DNA of 64,000 bases from positions 62,001-126,000 of IMG/VR virus record IMGVR_UViG_3300024054_000362; one strand, given 5' to 3'. Made by a program: the position numbers and the translations under genes. Positions 11,739 through 26,787 of this stretch are shown in pieces. A model generated the notes under the pieces. The model searched no databases and was not told the origin of the DNA. It saw only the letters and a list, made by a program, of their open reading frames with translations. Within the stretch, counting starts at the first letter, position 1. Every line of letters begins with the position of its first letter.

Positions 11739-13364
11739 ATGACAAGTTTGTCCACGCGTTTTTGGGCACTTACCGAGCAAGTTGATGGATGTTGTGTGTG
11801 GCGTGGCGGACAGTCAAACGGCCATGCGCGGTTTCATCTTCTCGCCGACGAGCGTGCTGTCTTCGAAGGTCGACGCGACATCTCTGCGCAACTTGTCGCA
11901 TGGTATCTGACCCACAACACCACCGAGCGCTTCGTCGATCGCACGTGTGGCAACACGCTCTGCGTCGAGCCAACACATCTTGAAGTGCGAACGATCGCCT
12001 CACGCTTCTGGCGAAACGTCGATCGTAGTGACGCGAACGGTTGTTGGCCGTGGAGAGGCGGCAAACACACCTTCGGATACGGCTCGACGAGTCACGGCTC
12101 GGCACATCGTATGGCCTACGAGCTTACTTACGGCGCAATCCCCGAAGGTGCCGTCGTGCGGCATACCTGCCATCAGCCGACGTGCTGTCGTCCCGATCAT
12201 CTCAAACTCGGTACGCAACGCGACAACGTCCACGACGCCATAGAAGCCGGACGAATGAACTACGCACGCGGTGAACGGATCCCACTCGCGAAATTCACCG
12301 ATGCACAAGCGGCAGCCATTTGTGAAGTCTTCACGGCGATGCGTAAAAACGCTGCTGAACCCAAACGTGAATCCATAGACAAGCTCGCACGCGCGTTGAA
12401 CGTCAATGCACGTACGGTCTGGCGGGTCGTCACCAACCGTGCATATCAAGATGTCGCCGTCGACGGTTCAACCGCGGGTGTTCTTCAGGCACTGCGTAGG
12501 CAAGGCTTCCCATGGCAAACAGTTCTCGACGTCGAAGAAGATCCTATCGCGCGTGTGCGCAATGCCAAGCTTGTCGTCGAGCACGACATCGTTACCAGCG
12601 TTGGAAGCGGCGGTCAGGCAACCTGTCTTCAGGCGCATCCACACCGATTCGCGGCGCGGCACCGCGGGCAACTATCTCTGATTGAAGCGTTCAACGATGA
12701 TGCCACGCTGACGCGCGCCATTCAGTACCAACAACGTCGCGGCGATCCCACTACACCAGCTAGCGTCGTACGCGCGCTTCAAGCGTTGGTGCGTTCACCG
12801 CGCAACTTCCCGCCTGCACTCGCGCGTTGGATCGTCGATGAATATGCACCAGAACATGGAACTGTTCTCGATCCGTGTTCTGGTTACGGTGGTCGCTTGC
12901 TTGGTGCAATAGCAAGCACGAAGAACGTGTGTTACATCGGACGTGACATCAACCCCGACTCCGTCCGCGGCAACCAACAGCTAGCGCAACAGTTGAAGGT
13001 CGACGAACGCGTCACGCAAACGCTCGCGTCCGTCCTCGACGACGATTGGCCCTCGGCGGATTTGATTTTCACGAGCCCGCCGTACTTCAACATCGAGGAC
13101 TACAGCAACGAGCCTGGTACGGAAACGTACGAGAGCTGGCGCGACGGCTTTTTGACGACGCTGATTGCACGCGCGCTCGCGGCTGCACCGCGACTTGTGC
13201 TCAACGTGGCTGCCGTAGGCGAACATGATCTTCCAACTGACGCTGTGCGGATTGCTGAGGTGCTAGGCGGTCGCATTGAGCGGATGTTGACATGGCCGCT
13301 ACGAAGTTTCGGTCGTGGTCCGCGCCGCGAGGAGAAGATCCTTGTCTTTCGATGTACCTTGTGA
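11739..13364 (+). CDS. HNH endonuclease - HTH - DNA amino-methyltransferase fusion
   Basis: CWPWRG..AHRMAY..VRHTCHQPTCCRPDHL (HNH) plus a degenerate upstream copy; LDPCSGYGG (SAM motif I) and FTSPPY (motif IV). Confidence 0.8.
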   Translation: MTSLSTRFWALTEQVDGCCVWRGGQSNGHARFHLLADERAVFEGRRDISAQLVAWYLTHNTTERFVDRTCGNTLCVEPTHLEVRTIASRFWRNVDRSDANGCWPWRGGKHTFGYGSTSHGSAHRMAYELTYGAIPEGAVVRHTCHQPTCCRPDHLKLGTQRDNVHDAIEAGRMNYARGERIPLAKFTDAQAAAICEVFTAMRKNAAEPKRESIDKLARALNVNARTVWRVVTNRAYQDVAVDGSTAGVLQALRRQGFPWQTVLDVEEDPIARVRNAKLVVEHDIVTSVGSGGQATCLQAHPHRFAARHRGQLSLIEAFNDDATLTRAIQYQQRRGDPTTPASVVRALQALVRSPRNFPPALARWIVDEYAPEHGTVLDPCSGYGGRLLGAIASTKNVCYIGRDINPDSVRGNQQLAQQLKVDERVTQTLASVLDDDWPSADLIFTSPPYFNIEDYSNEPGTETYESWRDGFLTTLIARALAAAPRLVLNVAAVGEHDLPTDAVRIAEVLGGRIERMLTWPLRSFGRGPRREEKILVFRCTL

Positions 13365-14021: not shown

Positions 14022-14607
14022 GCGTAGCGTCCATATACACAGATCACTCACAGATCACCGTGATCTTCTTCTTGGTACGGATGATCTTCGCCAGCATTTC
14101 GAAAAACGCTGCGATGTCTTCACCGTCCGCACTCGAAAATTCACAAATCACGCGCGCTGCCAGAAGCTGTCTCGGCAGAGGCTTGGTAGGTACGCGACTC
14201 TCCGGTGGCTCGATGTCGTCAACGATCGTCTTCTCGACCTCGTCTATCGCCGACCGCGCCGCATGGCGCTGACCAACATCATGGCCACACGGTGTAACTA
14301 ACGTCGTTCCAATCGGGCACGTGTTGCATGCGTCGCCGCGACAGAACGGACACGTCGGACCTGGGCACGTGAGCGGCGAGATGTCTCTAGGTTACCCGAG
14401 TTGTCGATCGCTGGAGCGATCCAGTCGCGCACGGCATCTTGCTCTCGACTTGGCGGTCGTGTTACGGCTGACACCGCGATCGATGAGTTAGGGGTTGGTC
14501 TGCACCGTACGTAACGCCTCGATTTGATTTGGGAAAATCTCCGTTGTCAGACAGCTCCTGTAGCGTTGATCGCGTTCAACCGACCGTTTCAGAAGGAGCA
14601 CGAGAGC

Positions 14608-16917
14608 ATGGGGAAGAAGATCGACGCCGTTTCGTTCGAGATCGACAAGGGCCTCTACCTGATCGAGCAGACGATCAGTCCGGGACAATCAACCAAGGCT
14701 GCCGAAACGCCGACCAATCACATCGCCGTCATCGACTGCTCGGGCAGCATGACCAGCGATCTGCCGCGCATCCGCGAACAGCTCAAGAAGAAGCTGCCGA
14801 AACTGCTCAAGGACGGCGACACGCTCTCGATGATCTGGTTCTCGGGCAAGGGCGAGACTGGCGCTCTGTTCGAGGCCGAACCTGTCGCGACGCTCGCCGA
14901 TCTCAACGACGTCAACAAGGCCGTCGACCGCTGGCTGCGCCCGATTGGCCTGACCGGCTTCAAGGAGCCGCTCGTCGAGGTCGAGAAGCTCGTCGGCCGC
15001 GTCGCCAAGAAGAACAAGAACCCGTTCTCGCTCTTCTTCATGAGCGACGGCTGCGACAACCAGTGGCCGCGCGCCGACATCCTGAAGGTCGTCGAGAAGA
15101 CGGCCGGCGTTCTGGCTTCGTCAACGTTCGTCGAGTACGGCTACTACGCCGACCGACCGCTGCTCGCCGCGATGGCCGAGAAGGCCGGCGGAACGCACAT
15201 TCACGCCGATGCCTTCGACAAGTACGAGGTCACGTTCGAGGCTTCGATGCAGAAGCGGCCGATGGCGGGCAAGCGCGTCGAGGTCGCTGTCGGCGGCGAC
15301 CCGATCGGCGGCTTCGCGTGGACGATCACGTGCGACGACGATCTCGTCACCTATGACGCGTCGACCGGCAAAACGTCCGTCCCCGAATTCACCGAAGCTA
15401 TCTACTACTTGTCGCCGACCGCCGTCGGCAACACAGGACTCCTGGCAGACCGCGCCGAGAGGGAGGCATCCGGCAAGGCGCGTTGCGCGATCAGCCCCGC
15501 GCACGCGGCGATGTCACTCTTCGCCGTTCGCATGAAGCCGGACATCGTCTACCCGATCCTGAAGGCACTCGGCGACGTCGCATTCATCGATCAATTCAGC
15601 GTGTGCTTCGGCAAGCAGAAGTACTCCGAATTCATGGACGCCGCGAAACTCGCCGCCGTCGACGAGACCAAGCGCTACACGAAGGGCCGCGACCCCAAGA
15701 AAGTCCCAACCGACGATGCGTTCACGGTGCTCGATCTACTCCGCGTGCTTTCTGAAGACGATAACACGCGGTTGCTCCTCGATCACCCCGACTTCAAGTA
15801 CTCGCGGATCAGCCGCGGACGCGTCGACGCCGACGAAAACCTGACCGCCGACGAACAGCTCGCCGTCGAGGTCATCCGTCAACAGATGGCCGGCGAGAAG
15901 TCCGCCAAGCGTCTCAAGGAGCTACAGTCTGAACTGGACGGCGTTCTCGCAGCCAAGCGCGACGCACTCAAGTTCGTGGCCGACGAAGCGCCGGACGGCT
16001 ATGCGATCTCAGGCCTCGTGTTCAACGAGAACAGCCCGAACATCAGCGTGCGCGTCAGGAAGACCGGCAAGGTCGATCTGTCGTCGCGTCCGGATCACGC
16101 CAAGTACAAGATCCCGACGAGCTTCCAGACGCACATCTGGCGCAACTACGCGATCGTGAGCCACGGCCTCGTGAACGTCGACAAGCTACCGGTTCGAATG
16201 TCGAAGACGGTGTGGGACACGCTTCACAAGGCGGGTGTTGCGATGTCCGATGACGGACACGGAACCGTCGTCATCGATGTGAAGCCGCTGCCGATCATCA
16301 ACCGCAAGATGGTCAAGGCGGTCTCCGCGAAAGACATCATCGAGCTGGAATATGAGCTGACGCGGGCTCGCGCCGCGCAGAAGGTCTACAAGGCCTACCA
16401 GGGCGAGCTGTTCCCGGACGCGAAGACCAAGAGCTTTGCCGATCTCTACGGTGAAGACGGCGCGACGTGGCTCAAGGACAACGGCTTCACGTACAACGGC
16501 TTCGCGCCGAAGATGGTCCAGGCCGAGAGCAAGGACTTCATCGTCGGCAAGGAGCTGGAGGTGAAGCTCAAGGGCTACTCGACGCTGCCGTCGCTCAAGG
16601 ACGCCAAGGCGAAGATGGGCGGCAAGATGAACGGCCCGACTGCGCTCATGGCGAAGGTGATCAACGAGGTCGACGACTTCCTCAAGAAGAACCCGAAGAA
16701 CCTCCACGAGAAGTGGCTCACGGGACAGACGCAGGCGCAGATCGCGAAGACCCGTGGCCTCATCTACCAGACGGCGCAGATCAAGTTCGGGATCATCGTG
16801 GGCCAGGTCTGGTTCAATGAATGGTCGAGCCTCGACGAAAACACCATGACGGTGAAGATCGACGGGCAGGAGATCGTCGGCGTCTGCGAGATGCGCGAGA
16901 TTGAGATCAGGATCTAG
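14608..16917 (+). CDS. large vWA-domain protein
   Basis: AGGAG RBS; MIDAS motif IDCSGSM, T, FMSDG; strong codon bias. Confidence 0.8.
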   Translation: MGKKIDAVSFEIDKGLYLIEQTISPGQSTKAAETPTNHIAVIDCSGSMTSDLPRIREQLKKKLPKLLKDGDTLSMIWFSGKGETGALFEAEPVATLADLNDVNKAVDRWLRPIGLTGFKEPLVEVEKLVGRVAKKNKNPFSLFFMSDGCDNQWPRADILKVVEKTAGVLASSTFVEYGYYADRPLLAAMAEKAGGTHIHADAFDKYEVTFEASMQKRPMAGKRVEVAVGGDPIGGFAWTITCDDDLVTYDASTGKTSVPEFTEAIYYLSPTAVGNTGLLADRAEREASGKARCAISPAHAAMSLFAVRMKPDIVYPILKALGDVAFIDQFSVCFGKQKYSEFMDAAKLAAVDETKRYTKGRDPKKVPTDDAFTVLDLLRVLSEDDNTRLLLDHPDFKYSRISRGRVDADENLTADEQLAVEVIRQQMAGEKSAKRLKELQSELDGVLAAKRDALKFVADEAPDGYAISGLVFNENSPNISVRVRKTGKVDLSSRPDHAKYKIPTSFQTHIWRNYAIVSHGLVNVDKLPVRMSKTVWDTLHKAGVAMSDDGHGTVVIDVKPLPIINRKMVKAVSAKDIIELEYELTRARAAQKVYKAYQGELFPDAKTKSFADLYGEDGATWLKDNGFTYNGFAPKMVQAESKDFIVGKELEVKLKGYSTLPSLKDAKAKMGGKMNGPTALMAKVINEVDDFLKKNPKNLHEKWLTGQTQAQIAKTRGLIYQTAQIKFGIIVGQVWFNEWSSLDENTMTVKIDGQEIVGVCEMREIEIRI

Positions 16918-23205: not shown

Positions 23206-23688
23206 GTGATCACGATGGTCGACAAACGGGTCGGCAGGGCGCTTGTCGCCGCTGTCTACGCGACCGATCGGCACATCTCGATCATGGAAGTCGCGCTGAA
23301 GGCATCACGACAAGGTCTTTCACCCGTCGACGTTGACACACCGAACGGTGTCGATGCGTTGATCGCAATCGCCGTCGCACTGATGGCCACACCGATCCTG
23401 TACCGACCGGTGATCGATCGACCGCGAGGTCTCTGGGCTAGCGCGGTCGACTGGGCACTCAAGATCGTCTCGTCCAAATTTGAAACGCCGGCTCAAGTTG
23501 CGGCTGCACACTGGCGCGCCGAGGTCGACCGTAAGCGCGAGATCAACCGTCGTATAGAGATGCTGAGACGTGCCGCGACCGTTTGCGGTACGGGCTTCGC
23601 CCAGAAGGCCACCGTAGACGCTCAAGCTCATCCAGAAGTTGCTCCGCTTCATGAGGTTCAAGATCAGCTCGGTAACGCGTCAGGATGA
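23206..23688 (+). CDS. hypothetical protein; 3' end overlaps the LAGLIDADG gene
   Basis: RQGLSPVDVDTPNGVDALIAIA, similar to 52866-53205. Confidence 0.5.
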   Translation: MITMVDKRVGRALVAAVYATDRHISIMEVALKASRQGLSPVDVDTPNGVDALIAIAVALMATPILYRPVIDRPRGLWASAVDWALKIVSSKFETPAQVAAAHWRAEVDRKREINRRIEMLRRAATVCGTGFAQKATVDAQAHPEVAPLHEVQDQLGNASG

Positions 23689-24532
23689 GATCGACTTCTG
23701 CGGCCTTTTCGATCACGTATGGCCGAACGTCTTGTAGAAATTTGAAAACGGCCTCGCGCGCGATCAGACGATACATGATTGATGAACGTTCTCGCCCTGT
23801 ACGGGCGACGTACTGAAAGCATCCACCATAGACCTGCCAGATGCGTTTGACGCCGTCTGCAAAGGTTTGATCGAACGCAACACGTACGTGCCACGTACGA
23901 CCGATTTTCTGGACGTCGATGTTACCGTCGCCGTCGAAGTACCCCGCGAAATAGTTCAAGTCCGTTTCATTTGGTTGACGTACGTACTCGAACGTTCGCA
24001 ACTTGTTTCGCGGTCCGACAACGAACGCACCATCGCGCTTCGCTTGTTGATAGTGACAACCACACAAGCCGCGACAAACGGCCACGAAACGACAGCCTTC
24101 GTGACTGCACGAGCCGCGACGTTTCTTCGTCAACGGGACATCAGTTTTCTTGAGACGACGTCTCTTCGCGCGCGCAAGATCTCGCATCAACGCTCGGCCC
24201 ACTGTGCGCGGTAACCGCGATGCGAAACGATCCAAAACCATCTGTGCTTGATCACGCTTCTCACCGAGGAAAGGCAAAACGTCGTTGAGGAAACATGCAA
24301 CGACAGCGTAGCGACGCATTTGCCAGCACGTCTTGTTGCCACTACGACGTAATGTTCCACCGTAGATCTGTTGAATACGTTCGAGGACGATCGGCTTTAC
24401 TTGCTGGAAGGCGACAGTCGCCTGCCAGAACTGCTCGTGATTCGTCGCGACACGAATACAACCTTCGGCGTCGAAGTAGCCCGCAAGATATGCACGGAAG
24501 CTAGACGACGGGGCAGGCAAACCGCGTGTCAT
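23543..24532 (-). CDS. free-standing two-domain LAGLIDADG homing endonuclease
   Basis: AYLAGYFDAEGCI and NYFAGYFDGDGNI; LPFLGEKRDQA and VRPYVIEKAAE; central CSHEGC..GLCGCHY. Confidence 0.9.
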   Translation of the reverse strand: MTRGLPAPSSSFRAYLAGYFDAEGCIRVATNHEQFWQATVAFQQVKPIVLERIQQIYGGTLRRSGNKTCWQMRRYAVVACFLNDVLPFLGEKRDQAQMVLDRFASRLPRTVGRALMRDLARAKRRRLKKTDVPLTKKRRGSCSHEGCRFVAVCRGLCGCHYQQAKRDGAFVVGPRNKLRTFEYVRQPNETDLNYFAGYFDGDGNIDVQKIGRTWHVRVAFDQTFADGVKRIWQVYGGCFQYVARTGRERSSIMYRLIAREAVFKFLQDVRPYVIEKAAEVDLILTRYRADLEPHEAEQLLDELERLRWPSGRSPYRKRSRHVSASLYDG

Positions 24533-24670
24533 AAGGAGATCTTAGCAACGACATGTTGCGATCCGCAAGGGAACTTTGCTCGACAGACGCACGTCGGTCT
24601 TCGCTTGCGTTAAGTTCGATCACAACAGCGATCAACATCGATCGCGCCCGTGACTAGCGAGGAGGACAAC

Positions 24671-25536
24671 GTGGGCCGATTGCCACTACAATTTGCCGGA
24701 AAGGACATCACCTTTCGGATTCCGTACAACATCGCTGCTGAATTGGACGTTGGTCCAAATCTCAACGGTGTTGTCTTCCCCGAAGCGTCCAACTACTGAA
24801 CGCCGCCCAAGGTAACTTGGGACGAAAAACCACGTGAACTGCTGGAACCCCCTAAAGCTCGAACGCCACAGCGTGGCCGGCAACGGCGAGCGCGACGGCT
24901 TGAAAAGCGTCGAGATGTACAATGGGCAATCAGCAGCCAAGCGACTCGGCGACGAGTCGAAGGTTCAACGACTAGGGCATGGAGTCTCAGCGGCGCAGGT
25001 CGGTGAGATGGTAGAGCCCCACGAGTGCGTGGCAACCGGTCACACCGGTTGAAGATATAGTCTGAGCTACCGGGAAACCGGTAGGAGCCGCATAAACAGC
25101 GGCTCGCTAACACACCTGCTTCCTCCACAACGTCGACAAACCGTTCGAGATCCACCGCGTCAAGATCGAGCTGACGGCCAAGGGCACCCCAGAAGGCTTC
25201 AGCACGCCGACTGTATTGGAGCCCCAACCGACGACGATGCAGCGTCGCGTGCGGCTCAACATCCTCGACTTCTCGAAGAACGAGAAGCTGACGAAGTCGT
25301 CGACGCTCGTCGGGCTTCTTCTTGCGCGCAACACGGGTGCGTGGGATCTCGAAGAGCCCTACACGATCGTCCGCAGCGAGGGCTTCCAAGTCGGCGTCGA
25401 CACGCTCGACTTTCCCGCCGTCGTCATCCTCGACGAGAACATCGAACCCGAGCGCGTGCTCGTCGAGTTCGTTCGCGTCGAGGTAAATCTTCAGGGCTAT
25501 CTCGACATCGTCGGTCCACCCAGCGAGGTCCGCTAA
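24671..25536 (+). CDS. intron-split beta-rich virion protein (exons 24671-24789 and 25119-25536; 178 aa)
   Basis: GGAGG RBS + GTG; joined exons read ..VVFPEASFLHNVDKPFEIHRVKIEL.. in frame to the stop at 25536. Confidence 0.75.
24790..25118 (+). ncRNA. group I self-splicing intron without ORF
   Basis: P AACTGCTGGAA (24837), Q AATCAGCAG (24928), R GTTCAACGACTA (24963), S AAGATATAGTCT (25052); P3 CCACGT/GCGTGG, P7 GACTA/TAGTC, P8, P9 with GAAA loop; terminal G 25118. Confidence 0.92.
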
Positions 25537-26352: not shown

Positions 26353-26787
26353 ATGAAGCAGATCAAGAAGATGATGATGATGGTTCTGATGCTCACGCTC
26401 GCCGGGTGCGGTTGCAGAGACAACCACGGCGACGATGATGACGCCGACATCGACGCGCCTGCGGTCGTCATCGACGCGCCCCCCGACGGGCCCAAGTCGT
26501 ACGCGCCGTGTGAAGGCTGCTGCGATCCGATCAACCAGACCGGCTGTGCGACGGGACAGGCTTGTTACCATCACGCAACCGGGCCCGATGCCGGACGGAC
26601 GTACTGCGATACGATGGGTACTGCGCCTTACGGCGGAAACTGTTTTGTTGATACTGACTGCTCAGCAGGCACAGGGTGCTTCAACGGCAAGTGCATCAAG
26701 TTCTGCACCGTCGCCGCCGAGTGCGCACCGATCCACAACAATTGTTTCCCAGCACAAGACCCGTTCATCTACGGCGTCTGTAGTTAG
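26353..26787 (+). CDS. Cys-rich lipoprotein, myxobacterial type
   Basis: lipobox LAG-C, DIDAP/IDAPPDG linker, CDPINQTGC.. Cys repeats. Confidence 0.75.
   Translation: MKQIKKMMMMVLMLTLAGCGCRDNHGDDDDADIDAPAVVIDAPPDGPKSYAPCEGCCDPINQTGCATGQACYHHATGPDAGRTYCDTMGTAPYGGNCFVDTDCSAGTGCFNGKCIKFCTVAAECAPIHNNCFPAQDPFIYGVCS

What the first reader, a model, noticed from the sequence alone, without database searches (positions are those of the whole stretch)
24790..25118. Hidden group I intron in a virion gene with an apparent non-canonical C.A 5' splice pair
Seen: a complete P/Q/R/S core and P2, P3, P6-P9 stems; the unspliced frame stops at 24797. With omega-G at 25118 the frame is restored if exon 1 ends GCG-TC (C24789). 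Exon GCGUC pairs with the guide AACGC (24799-24803), placing C opposite A where group I introns normally have U.G. The spliced product is a 178-aa beta-rich protein missed by the ORF track. Group I introns in putative tailless-virus structural genes would be unusual.
Basis: partly seen in the sequence, partly recalled or inferred. Interest (0 to 1): 0.75.

Follow-up and report, generated by a model that had tools for sequence, protein, structure and literature searches.

The report
Self-splicing intron with unusual splice pair
A conserved 178-residue gene of a 221-kb lake virus is interrupted by a real group I self-splicing intron whose cut site follows a C facing an A instead of the near-universal U facing G, and a free-standing homing endonuclease gene sits next door.

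Summary
Window 24790-25118 is a 329-nt ORF-less group I intron (Rfam RF00028, 71.8 bits against a cut-off of 50). Over 100 intronless homologs, mostly 178 aa, read ...VFPEAS|FLHNVDKPF..., so exon 1 must end at C24789 and the intron at G25118, the only G that restores the frame. The base before the cut is codon position 2 of a conserved Ser/Thr, so it must be C. In all five independent variants at this site it faces an invariant A in the guide sequence (GCGUC|C against G-A-ACGC). A sister intron in other flanks has U.G at the homologous position, which looks like an isosteric U.G to C.A exchange. The ribozyme is under selection: 6 compensatory pairs, 0 broken of 92. So is the gene (dN/dS 0.06-0.15). 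Intron-bearing alleles are polyphyletic (AU p=1e-11), and the introns are 90-92% identical while exon fourfold sites differ at 49-57%, so the intron moves. A divergently transcribed free-standing LAGLIDADG endonuclease lies upstream of every intron-bearing allele with known flanks, and of some intronless ones. Splicing itself is untested, since no RNA run was listed. "Virion gene" and "tailless virus" are not established; the protein has only a generic jelly-roll fold.

The parts
24659..24665 (+). Shine-Dalgarno GAGGAGG of the interrupted gene
   Evidence: Read directly from the sequence; it lies 5 nt upstream of GTG 24671.
24671..24789 (+). Exon 1 (GTG start; 39 codons plus the first two bases, TC, of Ser40)
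   Evidence: Homologs start MGRLPLQF and read ...VVFPEAS. DNA homology to intronless L001 runs to 24787. The spliced translation is intact.
24785..24803 (+). P1 hairpin. Exon GCGUC (24785-89) and intron CA (24790-91) pair with the guide UG-A-ACGC (24797-24803). The splice-site pair is C24789 opposite A24799. The loop is ACUAC.
   Evidence: It is the MFE structure in all five variants. The covariance model puts C and A in its U.G column in L004/L005. These bases are invariant in five variants while the loop varies.
24790..25118 (+). Group I intron, 329 nt, with no real ORF, ending in omega-G25118
   Evidence: Rfam 71.8 bits. It is a clean insertion relative to L001. The terminal G followed by C is conserved in the window, L004, L086, L092 and L043.
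24806..24821 (+). P2: a 6-bp stem CCCAAG/CUUGGG with a GUAA (GNRA) loop
   Evidence: The sister intron L093 has CUGAG-GUAA-CUCAG, i.e. compensatory changes.
24970..24974 (+). P7 5' strand GACUA (R element); it pairs with UAGUC at 25058-25062
   Evidence: It matches the Rfam consensus at high posterior probability, and RNAalifold predicts pairs at columns 192-196/280-284.
24975..25023 (+). Insertion between P7 and P3' (P7.1/P7.2-like hairpin), the mark of subgroup IA
   Evidence: It is a 49-nt insert at that place in the Rfam alignment. It folds as a hairpin, and its length varies among variants.
25067..25105 (+). P9 (CUACCGG-GAAA-CCGGUAG) and P9.1 (GAGCCGC-AUAAACA-GCGGCUC)
   Evidence: Compensatory double changes among variants: one pair in P9 and three in P9.1. 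L043 shows further compensatory changes in P9.
25119..25536 (+). Exon 2 (the third base, C, of Ser40, then FLHNVDKPF... to TAA 25534-36)
   Evidence: 93% identical to P0001 over 141 aa. DNA homology to L001 resumes at 25118.
23543..24532 (-). Free-standing double-motif LAGLIDADG homing endonuclease gene (329 aa), transcribed divergently; its start is 257 nt from the intron insertion site
   Evidence: Pfam LAGLIDADG_3 (E 3e-10) and LAGLIDADG_1 (E 8e-7), both above cut-off. Two motifs, GYFDAEG and GYFDGDG, are present. It is distantly related to I-CreI, I-CvuI and I-MsoI. The region is absent from the close relative L001.
24834..25052 (+). Spurious 72-aa ORF inside the intron; it is called as a gene in public data
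   Evidence: It was used as a probe to find other intron copies.

Best explanation
Window 24790-25118 is a functional, ORF-less group I intron of subgroup IA type. It is inserted in phase 2 of the Ser40 codon (TC|C) of a conserved 178-aa jelly-roll-like protein gene of a 221-kb lake-water virus. Splicing joins C24789 to C25119 and restores ...PEAS-FLHN.... The 5' splice site is set by a short P1 in which exon GCGUC pairs with the guide sequence. The base before the cut cannot be U, because it is the second position of a Ser/Thr codon that the protein needs. It is C, and its partner in the guide is A24799 rather than G. I infer that these form an A(+).C wobble of the same shape as U.G, so the usual recognition of the splice-site wobble still works. 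G24798 first pairs with the intron's C24790 (P1 extension) and could then pair with exon-2 C25119 as a one-pair P10. The intron spreads horizontally among diverged alleles of the gene. The likely driver is the divergently transcribed free-standing LAGLIDADG endonuclease just upstream, by collaborative (trans) homing. Shown here: the intron, the insertion point, the C and the A, their conservation, selection on the RNA fold and on the protein, polyphyly of intron-bearing alleles, and co-occurrence with the endonuclease. Inferred: that splicing occurs, the geometry and protonation of the C.A pair, and the endonuclease's target. The overall confidence of 0.72 breaks down as: real intron at these splice sites about 0.93; C.A as the splice-site pair about 0.75; endonuclease-driven homing about 0.45.
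For: Intron: Rfam 71.8 bits in the window, and 79.3, 65.4 and 63.6 bits in L004/5, L092 and L093. Junction: 110 homologs, most of them 178 aa, reading VFPEASFLHNVDKPF; G25118 is the only usable G; the intron is a clean insertion relative to L001. C opposite A: the covariance model places C and A in its conserved U.G column in L004/L005. The C.A register is the MFE in all five variants, at -4.7 against -2.9 kcal/mol for the C-G-plus-bulge register in the window. GCGUC|C and G-A-ACGC are invariant in five variants, while the P1 loop and neighbouring codons vary, and the only changes in the 11 nt before the cut are synonymous (GAA>GAG, CCC>CCT). Sister intron L093 (82% identical, different flanks) has the same hairpin with U.G at that pair, and L094 has a clean U.G. 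Function: 6 compensatory pairs and 0 broken of 92; dN/dS of 0.125 between two intron-bearing alleles with dS 1.16. Mobility: the AU test rejects one clade of intron-bearing alleles (p 1e-11, at least 3 changes). Introns are 90-92% identical while fourfold sites in the exons differ at 49-57%. Endonuclease: an intact double LAGLIDADG lies upstream of 4 of 4 intron-bearing lineages with known flanks, against 4 of 23 intronless ones (Fisher 0.004). Collaborative homing is an established pathway (PMC3984707).
Against: There is no RNA evidence: no RNA run was listed, and the DNA contigs show no variants. P1 shows no covariation within the same-site variants, because exon and guide are invariant. The U.G to C.A exchange therefore rests on one sister intron whose own splice sites are predicted, not verified. 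A C-G pair with A24800 bulged is possible in every variant. The endonucleases next to the introns are far more diverged than the introns (45-49% identical for L004's against the others, 75-77% among the window, L086 and L091). So the intron and the endonuclease do not travel as one block, and the link between them is only an association among related sequences. The minor-groove amino group of G that the ribozyme core contacts in a U.G pair (PMC9943679) is missing in A.C, so docking may be weaker or may need a cofactor.
Confidence: 0.72

Rival explanations
1. The splice sites are the same, but the splice-site pair is a Watson-Crick C24789-G24798 with A24800 bulged (U24788 pairing with A24799). 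That would match the natural C.G exceptions reported in fungal mitochondrial introns rather than a C.A wobble.
For: The register is possible in all five variants, because G-A-A is invariant. It appears among the suboptimal folds at -2.9 kcal/mol. [quoted passage not shown]
Against: It is 1.8 kcal/mol less stable than the C.A register in the window and is not the MFE in any variant. It gives up the C24790-G24798 and A24791-U24797 extension. In the sister intron L093 the position homologous to A24799, not to G24798, is the G that pairs with the U before the cut.
Confidence: 0.17
2. The intron uses a canonical U: the 5' splice site follows U24777, paired with G24819 in a helix UUGUCUU/GGGACGA. 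The mRNA would be 12 nt shorter and the protein would lack PEAS.
For: The helix can form, with G.U pairs, in the window, L004, L086 and L091. U24777 is in the right phase for G25118.
Against: It would delete four conserved residues, including the nearly invariant P37. The 11 nt concerned change only synonymously among variants, so they are coding. DNA homology to intronless L001 continues to 24787. The helix destroys P2 and is less stable in context (-8.5 against -14.6 kcal/mol), and such a 7-mer match occurs in 25% of shuffles.
Confidence: 0.03
3. The intron no longer splices, or splices too poorly, and the interrupted gene is a decaying pseudogene in this virus.
For: The defining U.G pair is missing, P10 is at most one pair, and there is no RNA evidence.
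Against: Both exons are intact and under purifying selection in three diverged intron-bearing lineages (dN/dS 0.06-0.15). The ribozyme helices keep pairing through six double changes with none broken. The same intron persists in at least five lineages.
Confidence: 0.04
4. The cut sites are shifted by one: exon 1 ends at C24790 (paired with G24798) and the intron ends at C25119. This gives the same mRNA.
For: C24790 and C25119 are the same letter, so the product sequence cannot tell the two apart.
Against: The intron would end in C instead of the G that group I chemistry needs. A G immediately before that C is conserved in all five variants with a 3' end, while the bases before it vary.
Confidence: 0.01

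Closest known systems
Phage group I introns of subgroup IA (T4 td, nrdB and sunY; introns in structural genes of Twort-like, crAss-like and other phages)
   Same: [quoted passage not shown] It has the P3-P9 core, an insert between P7 and P3', a GNRA-capped P2, a terminal G, and a patchy distribution among close relatives.
   Different: The base before the cut is C opposite A rather than U opposite G, and the intron carries no endonuclease ORF. The subgroup assignment rests on my reading of the Rfam alignment and on general knowledge, not on a subgroup-specific model.
Aspergillus nidulans mitochondrial group I introns with C.G at the 5' splice site (Hur and Waring 1995, Nucleic Acids Res 23:4466; reference seen, paper not held)
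   Same: Natural introns in which U.G is replaced because the exon base is fixed by the protein. The paper's title asks whether 'selection is post-translational', which is the same logic as here, where the C is position 2 of a Ser/Thr codon.
   Different: Those have a Watson-Crick C.G. Here the guide carries A, giving C.A, and a sister intron shows U.G at the homologous pair. The paper's content beyond its title is from memory.
Engineered C.A splice-site pairs in the Tetrahymena ribozyme (Doudna, Cormack and Szostak 1989, PNAS 86:7402; reference seen, paper not held)
   Same: From memory: a C.A mismatch, which can adopt wobble geometry, can stand in for U.G in choosing the 5' splice site. This is the mechanism proposed here.
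   Different: That is a laboratory mutant of a nuclear rRNA intron. This would be a natural, conserved case in a viral protein-coding gene.
Collaborative (trans) homing: cyanophage S-PM2 psbA intron with free-standing F-CphI, and T4 mobE with the I-TevIII intron (PMC3984707, PMC6083498, PMC2790892)
   Same: [quoted passage not shown] Endonuclease homologs also occur next to intronless alleles.
   Different: The endonuclease is a LAGLIDADG enzyme, not an Endo VII-like or HNH one, and it lies upstream on the opposite strand. Its target is unknown. The introns are much more alike than the endonucleases beside them.

Membership tests
Group I intron (Rfam RF00028) | Covariance-model score at or above the curated gathering score | tested here: met
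   71.8 bits against 50 in the window and 68.1 in the genome scan. Relatives score 79.3, 65.4 and 63.6.
Group I intron (Rfam RF00028) | Conserved core helices P3-P9, including the P4/P7 strands (P, Q, R, S elements) | tested here: met
   The full-length model match 1-253 has a high posterior over P3, P4, P6, P7, P8 and P9. RNAalifold finds 92 pairs, 6 compensatory and 0 broken.
Group I intron (Rfam RF00028) | Intron ends in G (omega-G) | tested here: met
   G25118 is the only G that restores the frame. A G before the exon-2 C is conserved in five variants.
Group I intron (Rfam RF00028) | U.G wobble pair at the 5' splice site in P1 | tested here: not met
   The base before the cut is C24789, opposite A24799. 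The Rfam consensus shows these two columns in upper case as U and G. A short review of the pair's role is in PMC9943679.
Group I intron (Rfam RF00028) | Self-splicing started by an exogenous guanosine | not testable with these tools
   No RNA run was listed; this needs an in vitro assay.
Subgroup IA group I introns | Extra helices P7.1/P7.2 between P7 and the 3' strand of P3 | tested here: met
   A 49-nt insert lies exactly there in the Rfam alignment. It folds as a hairpin. The criterion itself is from general knowledge (Michel and Westhof 1990).
LAGLIDADG homing endonucleases | LAGLIDADG domain(s) above the curated cut-off, with the acidic residue of each motif present | tested here: met
   PF14528 at 40.6 bits (cut-off 22.5) and PF00961 at 30.3 bits (cut-off 23.1). 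The motifs GYFDAEG and GYFDGDG start at residues 18 and 197. It is distantly related to I-CreI, I-CvuI and I-MsoI.
LAGLIDADG homing endonucleases | Site-specific cleavage of a long DNA target | not testable with these tools
   Needs purified protein and target plasmids.
Collaborative (trans) homing pair | ORF-less intron and a free-standing endonuclease gene beside the interrupted gene | tested here: met
   The intron has no real ORF. The endonuclease gene lies at 23543-24532 on the minus strand. The layout is the same in L004/5, L086-90 and L091.
Collaborative (trans) homing pair | The endonuclease cuts intronless alleles at the intron insertion site | not testable with these tools
   There are only hints. 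The intron occurs only together with the endonuclease (4 of 4 against 4 of 23, Fisher 0.004, sequences not independent). Intronless alleles that have the endonuclease mostly carry AGY instead of TCN at the junction serine.
Virion (capsid) jelly-roll proteins | Fold match to a capsid protein family that stands clearly above unrelated beta-sandwiches | tested here: inconclusive
   The AlphaFold model has pLDDT 90. The best Z is 7.4, shared by capsid jelly rolls, nucleoplasmin and a monooxygenase. Foldseek TM is at most 0.5.
Virion (capsid) jelly-roll proteins | Location in a recognisable virion gene module | tested here: not met
   The neighbours have no PHROG or Pfam virion family. The 328-aa neighbour gives only generic beta-sandwich matches. 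The record has no Terminase_6N, TerL_ATPase, Phage_portal, Phage_capsid, Phage_sheath_1 or Capsid_NCLDV hit.

The most novel reading that the evidence does not exclude
This would be a natural, conserved A(+).C wobble replacing the U.G pair that defines the 5' splice site of group I introns. It arose by an isosteric U.G to C.A exchange when a mobile intron lineage settled in a codon position that must be C. Because the pair needs a protonated adenine, splicing, and with it production of the 178-aa protein, could depend on pH or on a helper protein such as the neighbouring LAGLIDADG protein acting as a maturase.
Probability: 0.5. Interest if true: 0.65.

Novelty: new variant of a known kind. Interest (0 to 1): 0.56.

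Why it matters
The U.G wobble before the cut is described as the one strict sequence rule for 5' splice-site choice in group I introns (PMC6155759; PMC9943679), and it is what design rules for trans-splicing and circular-RNA ribozymes rely on. A natural lineage that keeps C.A across at least five diverged copies, next to a sister intron with U.G, would show three things. The rule concerns shape rather than the identity of the bases. Mobile introns can colonise sites where the protein forbids a U. Gene finders and intron annotators that insist on U will miss such introns: public gene calls for this gene are 49-, 72- and 99-137-aa fragments. The locus also offers a fresh, testable LAGLIDADG example of an ORF-less intron paired with a free-standing endonuclease.

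Tried and rejected
1. The Rfam model's own P1 for the window (U24772.G24802, with a 19-nt insert) is out of frame with G25118 and would remove VFPEAS. I treat it as an alignment artefact. In L004/L005 the same model chooses the C.A register.
2. A 5' splice site after U24788 needs the intron to end in U25117 and gives Cys where homologs have Ser/Thr.
3. The canonical-U alternative at U24777 is rejected (see the rivals).
4. RNA evidence: no RNA run was listed. Laying DNA contigs from four lake runs showed no variants, joints or intron-free form.
5. Exact-string scans for the intron core found nothing in viral or genome contigs. A looser motif found 32 viral contigs with distant relatives in other genes, but the general model's P1 alignments there were too unreliable for a survey of the splice-site pair.
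6. Searching the exon-1 ORF returned only the window's own cluster. Listing that cluster's members, and probing with the spurious intron ORF, did find new copies.
7. Literature: I found no paper describing a natural C.A at a group I 5' splice site. The key older papers (Hur and Waring 1995, Doudna et al. 1989, Varani and McClain 2000) are not held. Absence from this library does not prove novelty.
8. Function of the 178-aa protein: Pfam, PHROGs, the phage collection and the ESM Atlas gave nothing usable.
9. The serine-codon idea (AGY alleles as endonuclease-resistant) is only a trend: 3 of 4 intronless alleles that have the endonuclease, against 4 of 9 close relatives without one.

Full report
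**What is there.** The window is bases 62001-126000 of a 221,422-bp IMG/VR virus record from lake-water metagenomes. Rfam's group I intron model matches 24763-25084 at 71.8 bits against a gathering score of 50. It is the only such hit in the record. The gene frame that opens at GTG 24671, after GAGGAGG at 24659-24665, stops at TGA 24797-24799. A second frame opens after TAA 25108-25110 and runs to 25536. Public gene calls for this locus are fragments: a 49-aa exon-1 ORF, a 72-aa ORF inside the intron, and a 99-aa tail.

**Where the splice sites are.**
- A search with exon 2 alone returned 110 homologs. Most are exactly 178 aa and read ...GVVFPEASFLHNVDKPFEIH....
- The window encodes ...VVFPEAS just before the intron and FLHNVDKPF just after it.
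- G25118 is the only G between the TAA and the TTC codon. Group I introns end in G, so exon 2 starts at C25119, and exon 1 must supply two bases of the Ser codon, ending at C24789.
- The join gives an intact 178-aa protein, 94% identical to its nearest intronless relative.
- DNA homology to that relative (L001) stops at 24787 and resumes at 25118, so the intron is a clean insertion.
- The nearby U24788 would need an intron ending in U25117 and would encode Cys.
- The one-base-shifted pair (C24790 with C25119) gives the same mRNA, because the two letters are both C. It would end the intron in C, so cDNA sequencing alone cannot settle this point.

**The splice-site pair.** Exon GCGU (24785-88) pairs with ACGC (24800-03). 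C24789 faces A24799. The helix continues with C24790-G24798 and A24791-U24797 around a five-base loop.
- This is the minimum-free-energy fold. It scores -4.7 kcal/mol, against -2.9 for the register in which C24789 pairs with G24798 and A24800 bulges.
- For the window, the Rfam model chose a different and impossible P1 (U24772.G24802, out of frame).
- For the related copies L004 and L005, the same model places C and A in the two columns that its consensus prints as conserved U and G.

**Independent copies.** I found the intron at the same codon in further diverged alleles:
- L004/L005;
- L086-L090 and L091, through the exon-1 ORF cluster;
- L092, through the spurious intron ORF;
- the 3' end only in L043, whose host protein is about 44% identical.

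In all five copies with a 5' end, GCGUC|C and G-A-ACGC are invariant, while the P1 loop differs (ACUAC, a longer U-rich loop in L004, ACCAC, ACUUC, AACUA). Upstream codons differ freely. The only changes in the 11 nt before the cut are synonymous, GAA>GAG and CCC>CCT, so that stretch is exon. All five fold to the same P1 with a one-by-one C.A loop, followed by a P2 capped by GUAA. The terminal G followed by C is kept in all five copies with a 3' end, while the preceding bases vary.

**Why C.** The base is the second position of a codon that is Ser or Thr in nearly all aligned homologs (TCN, ACN or AGY). A U there would change the residue. This is the logic that Hur and Waring's 1995 title raises for two fungal introns with C.G (reference seen; the paper is not held).

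**Why A.** A sister intron, L093, is 82% identical and sits in unrelated flanking sequence. It has the same hairpin, with exon CGGU|C against GGCCG. The column homologous to A24799 is a G facing a U. A more distant relative, L094, has a clean U.G in the covariance model. Within this intron lineage the pair therefore appears to have changed on both sides, from U.G to C.A. These two combinations can share wobble geometry if the adenine is protonated (general knowledge). Laboratory work on Tetrahymena reportedly showed that C.A can replace U.G (Doudna et al. 1989; title seen, content from memory). L093's own splice sites are predicted, not verified, and this is the weakest link.

**Is it alive?**
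- Among three full-length variants, RNAalifold predicts 92 pairs. Six show changes on both sides (P5, P8, P9, and three in P9.1) and none is broken.
- dN/dS is 0.125 between the window and L004 alleles, at dS 1.16, and 0.055 against L001.
- A dead intron would have released both the ribozyme and the gene from selection.
- No RNA run was listed, so splicing itself is inferred.

**Mobility.**
- Each of the three intron-bearing alleles sits in a different well-supported clade with intronless alleles.
- Forcing the three together costs 78 log-likelihood units (AU p 1e-11), so at least three gains or losses are needed.
- The introns are 90-92% identical, while fourfold-degenerate sites of the surrounding exons differ at 49-57%.
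- In a sliding comparison the intron is the best-conserved stretch of the locus: 88-95%, against 70-82% for exons and 35-57% for intergenic DNA.
- Recent horizontal spread fits best. Strong constraint on the RNA also contributes.

**The neighbour.**
- ORF 23543-24532 on the minus strand is a 329-aa protein with two LAGLIDADG motifs, both with their acidic residues. It is distantly related to I-CreI, I-CvuI and I-MsoI.
- The region is missing from the close relative L001.
- Homologs lie in the same place and orientation upstream of every intron-bearing allele whose flank is known (4 of 4 lineages), and upstream of 4 of 23 intronless ones. Fisher's test gives 0.004, but the sequences are related, so this is indicative only.
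- The layout is that of collaborative or trans homing, as described for S-PM2 psbA with F-CphI and T4 mobE with I-TevIII (PMC3984707).
- Against a simple joint element: the endonucleases are much more diverged than the introns (L004's is 45-49% identical to the others; the window, L086 and L091 are 75-77% identical to each other).
- Intronless alleles that carry the endonuclease mostly encode the junction serine as AGT or AGC rather than TCN. That would fit self-protection of a target at this site, but the trend is weak.

**The host gene and the virus.**
- The AlphaFold model of the 178-aa protein is confident (pLDDT 90, pTM 0.82) and all-beta.
- Matches are jelly rolls of many kinds: capsid proteins of HHIV-2, HCIV-1, SPV1, PRD1 and giant viruses, but also nucleoplasmin and a monooxygenase. 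All have Z <= 7.4 and TM <= 0.5, below the level the tools advise trusting.
- No Pfam or PHROG family matches it, no homolog exists in 50,697 phage records, and the ESM Atlas gave no lead.
- The conserved 328-aa neighbour also gives only generic beta-sandwich hits.
- The record matches no Pfam terminase, portal, HK97-type capsid, sheath or NCLDV capsid model. It does carry phage-like replication and endonuclease genes.
- 'Virion gene' and 'tailless virus' remain open. Introns in phage structural genes are already known in any case.

**Verdict.** It breaks the family's most conserved pairing rule in a way that is conserved, explained by the coding constraint, and mirrored by U.G in a sister intron. 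It is a new variant of a known kind. The chemistry still needs the bench.

Noticed in passing
window 23543-24532 (-), residues about 124-170: The LAGLIDADG endonuclease carries a Cys/His-rich segment (CSHEGC...CRGLCGCHY) between its two halves, and this segment matches PHROG 'HNH endonuclease' families. It may be an inserted zinc-binding DNA-binding module.
   Followed up: partly
window 23206-23688 (+) and 23543-24532 (-): The 160-aa ORF upstream overlaps the 3' end of the endonuclease ORF by about 146 nt. Homology to L001's 153-aa gene ends at 23476, so the endonuclease insertion seems to have replaced that gene's 3' end.
   Followed up: partly
L026, L014/L015, L011, L023 against L007, L008, L012, L025, L049: Intronless alleles with an upstream endonuclease mostly encode the junction serine as AGT or AGC, while endonuclease-free close relatives are split between TCN and AGC. 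This may reflect resistance to cleavage at the intron insertion site.
   Followed up: partly
window 24782-24787 with 25117-25122: Exon-1 GAAGCG can pair with UGCUUC across the 3' splice site, and RNAalifold prefers this to P1. It probably follows from the Glu (GAA) and Phe (TTC) codons being reverse complements, but it could bring the two splice sites together or compete with P1.
   Followed up: no
G000 contig 1, 199258-199788 (-), outside the window: A second LAGLIDADG domain pair lies inside a 768-aa open frame without stops, which looks like an intein in a host protein.
   Followed up: no
window 11739-13364 (+): A 541-aa ORF combines an HNH endonuclease domain (HNH_3) with a weak DNA methylase match. 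It is another mobile-element-like gene in the same window.
   Followed up: no
L061 9185-11250 (IMGVR_UViG_3300030098_003770): Five separate group I introns (75-93 bits) lie within about 2 kb of one viral contig, which is an unusually intron-dense gene.
   Followed up: no
P0183 (1671 aa; hit of the intron-ORF probe): A 1671-aa predicted protein matches the 72-aa intron-derived peptide in nine separate stretches. It may be a read-through of many related introns or a repeat protein.
   Followed up: no
window 26353-26787 (+): A 144-aa Cys-rich ORF has a lipoprotein-like signal (...LTLAGC...). It is conserved in position next to the interrupted gene in related loci.
   Followed up: no
window 14524-16917 (+): A 797-aa protein matches phrog_2426 (E 5e-166). 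About 34% identical homologs occur in 491 phage records, mostly Ackermannviridae-like, some annotated as vWA-domain protein. This is a link between this otherwise unclassifiable virus and tailed phages.
   Followed up: partly
P0066 (Gemmatimonadota MAG, 4.7-Mb contig): A homolog of the 178-aa protein sits on a 4.7-Mb bacterial contig, so relatives of this gene block may be integrated in bacterial chromosomes. This hints at the host range.
   Followed up: no
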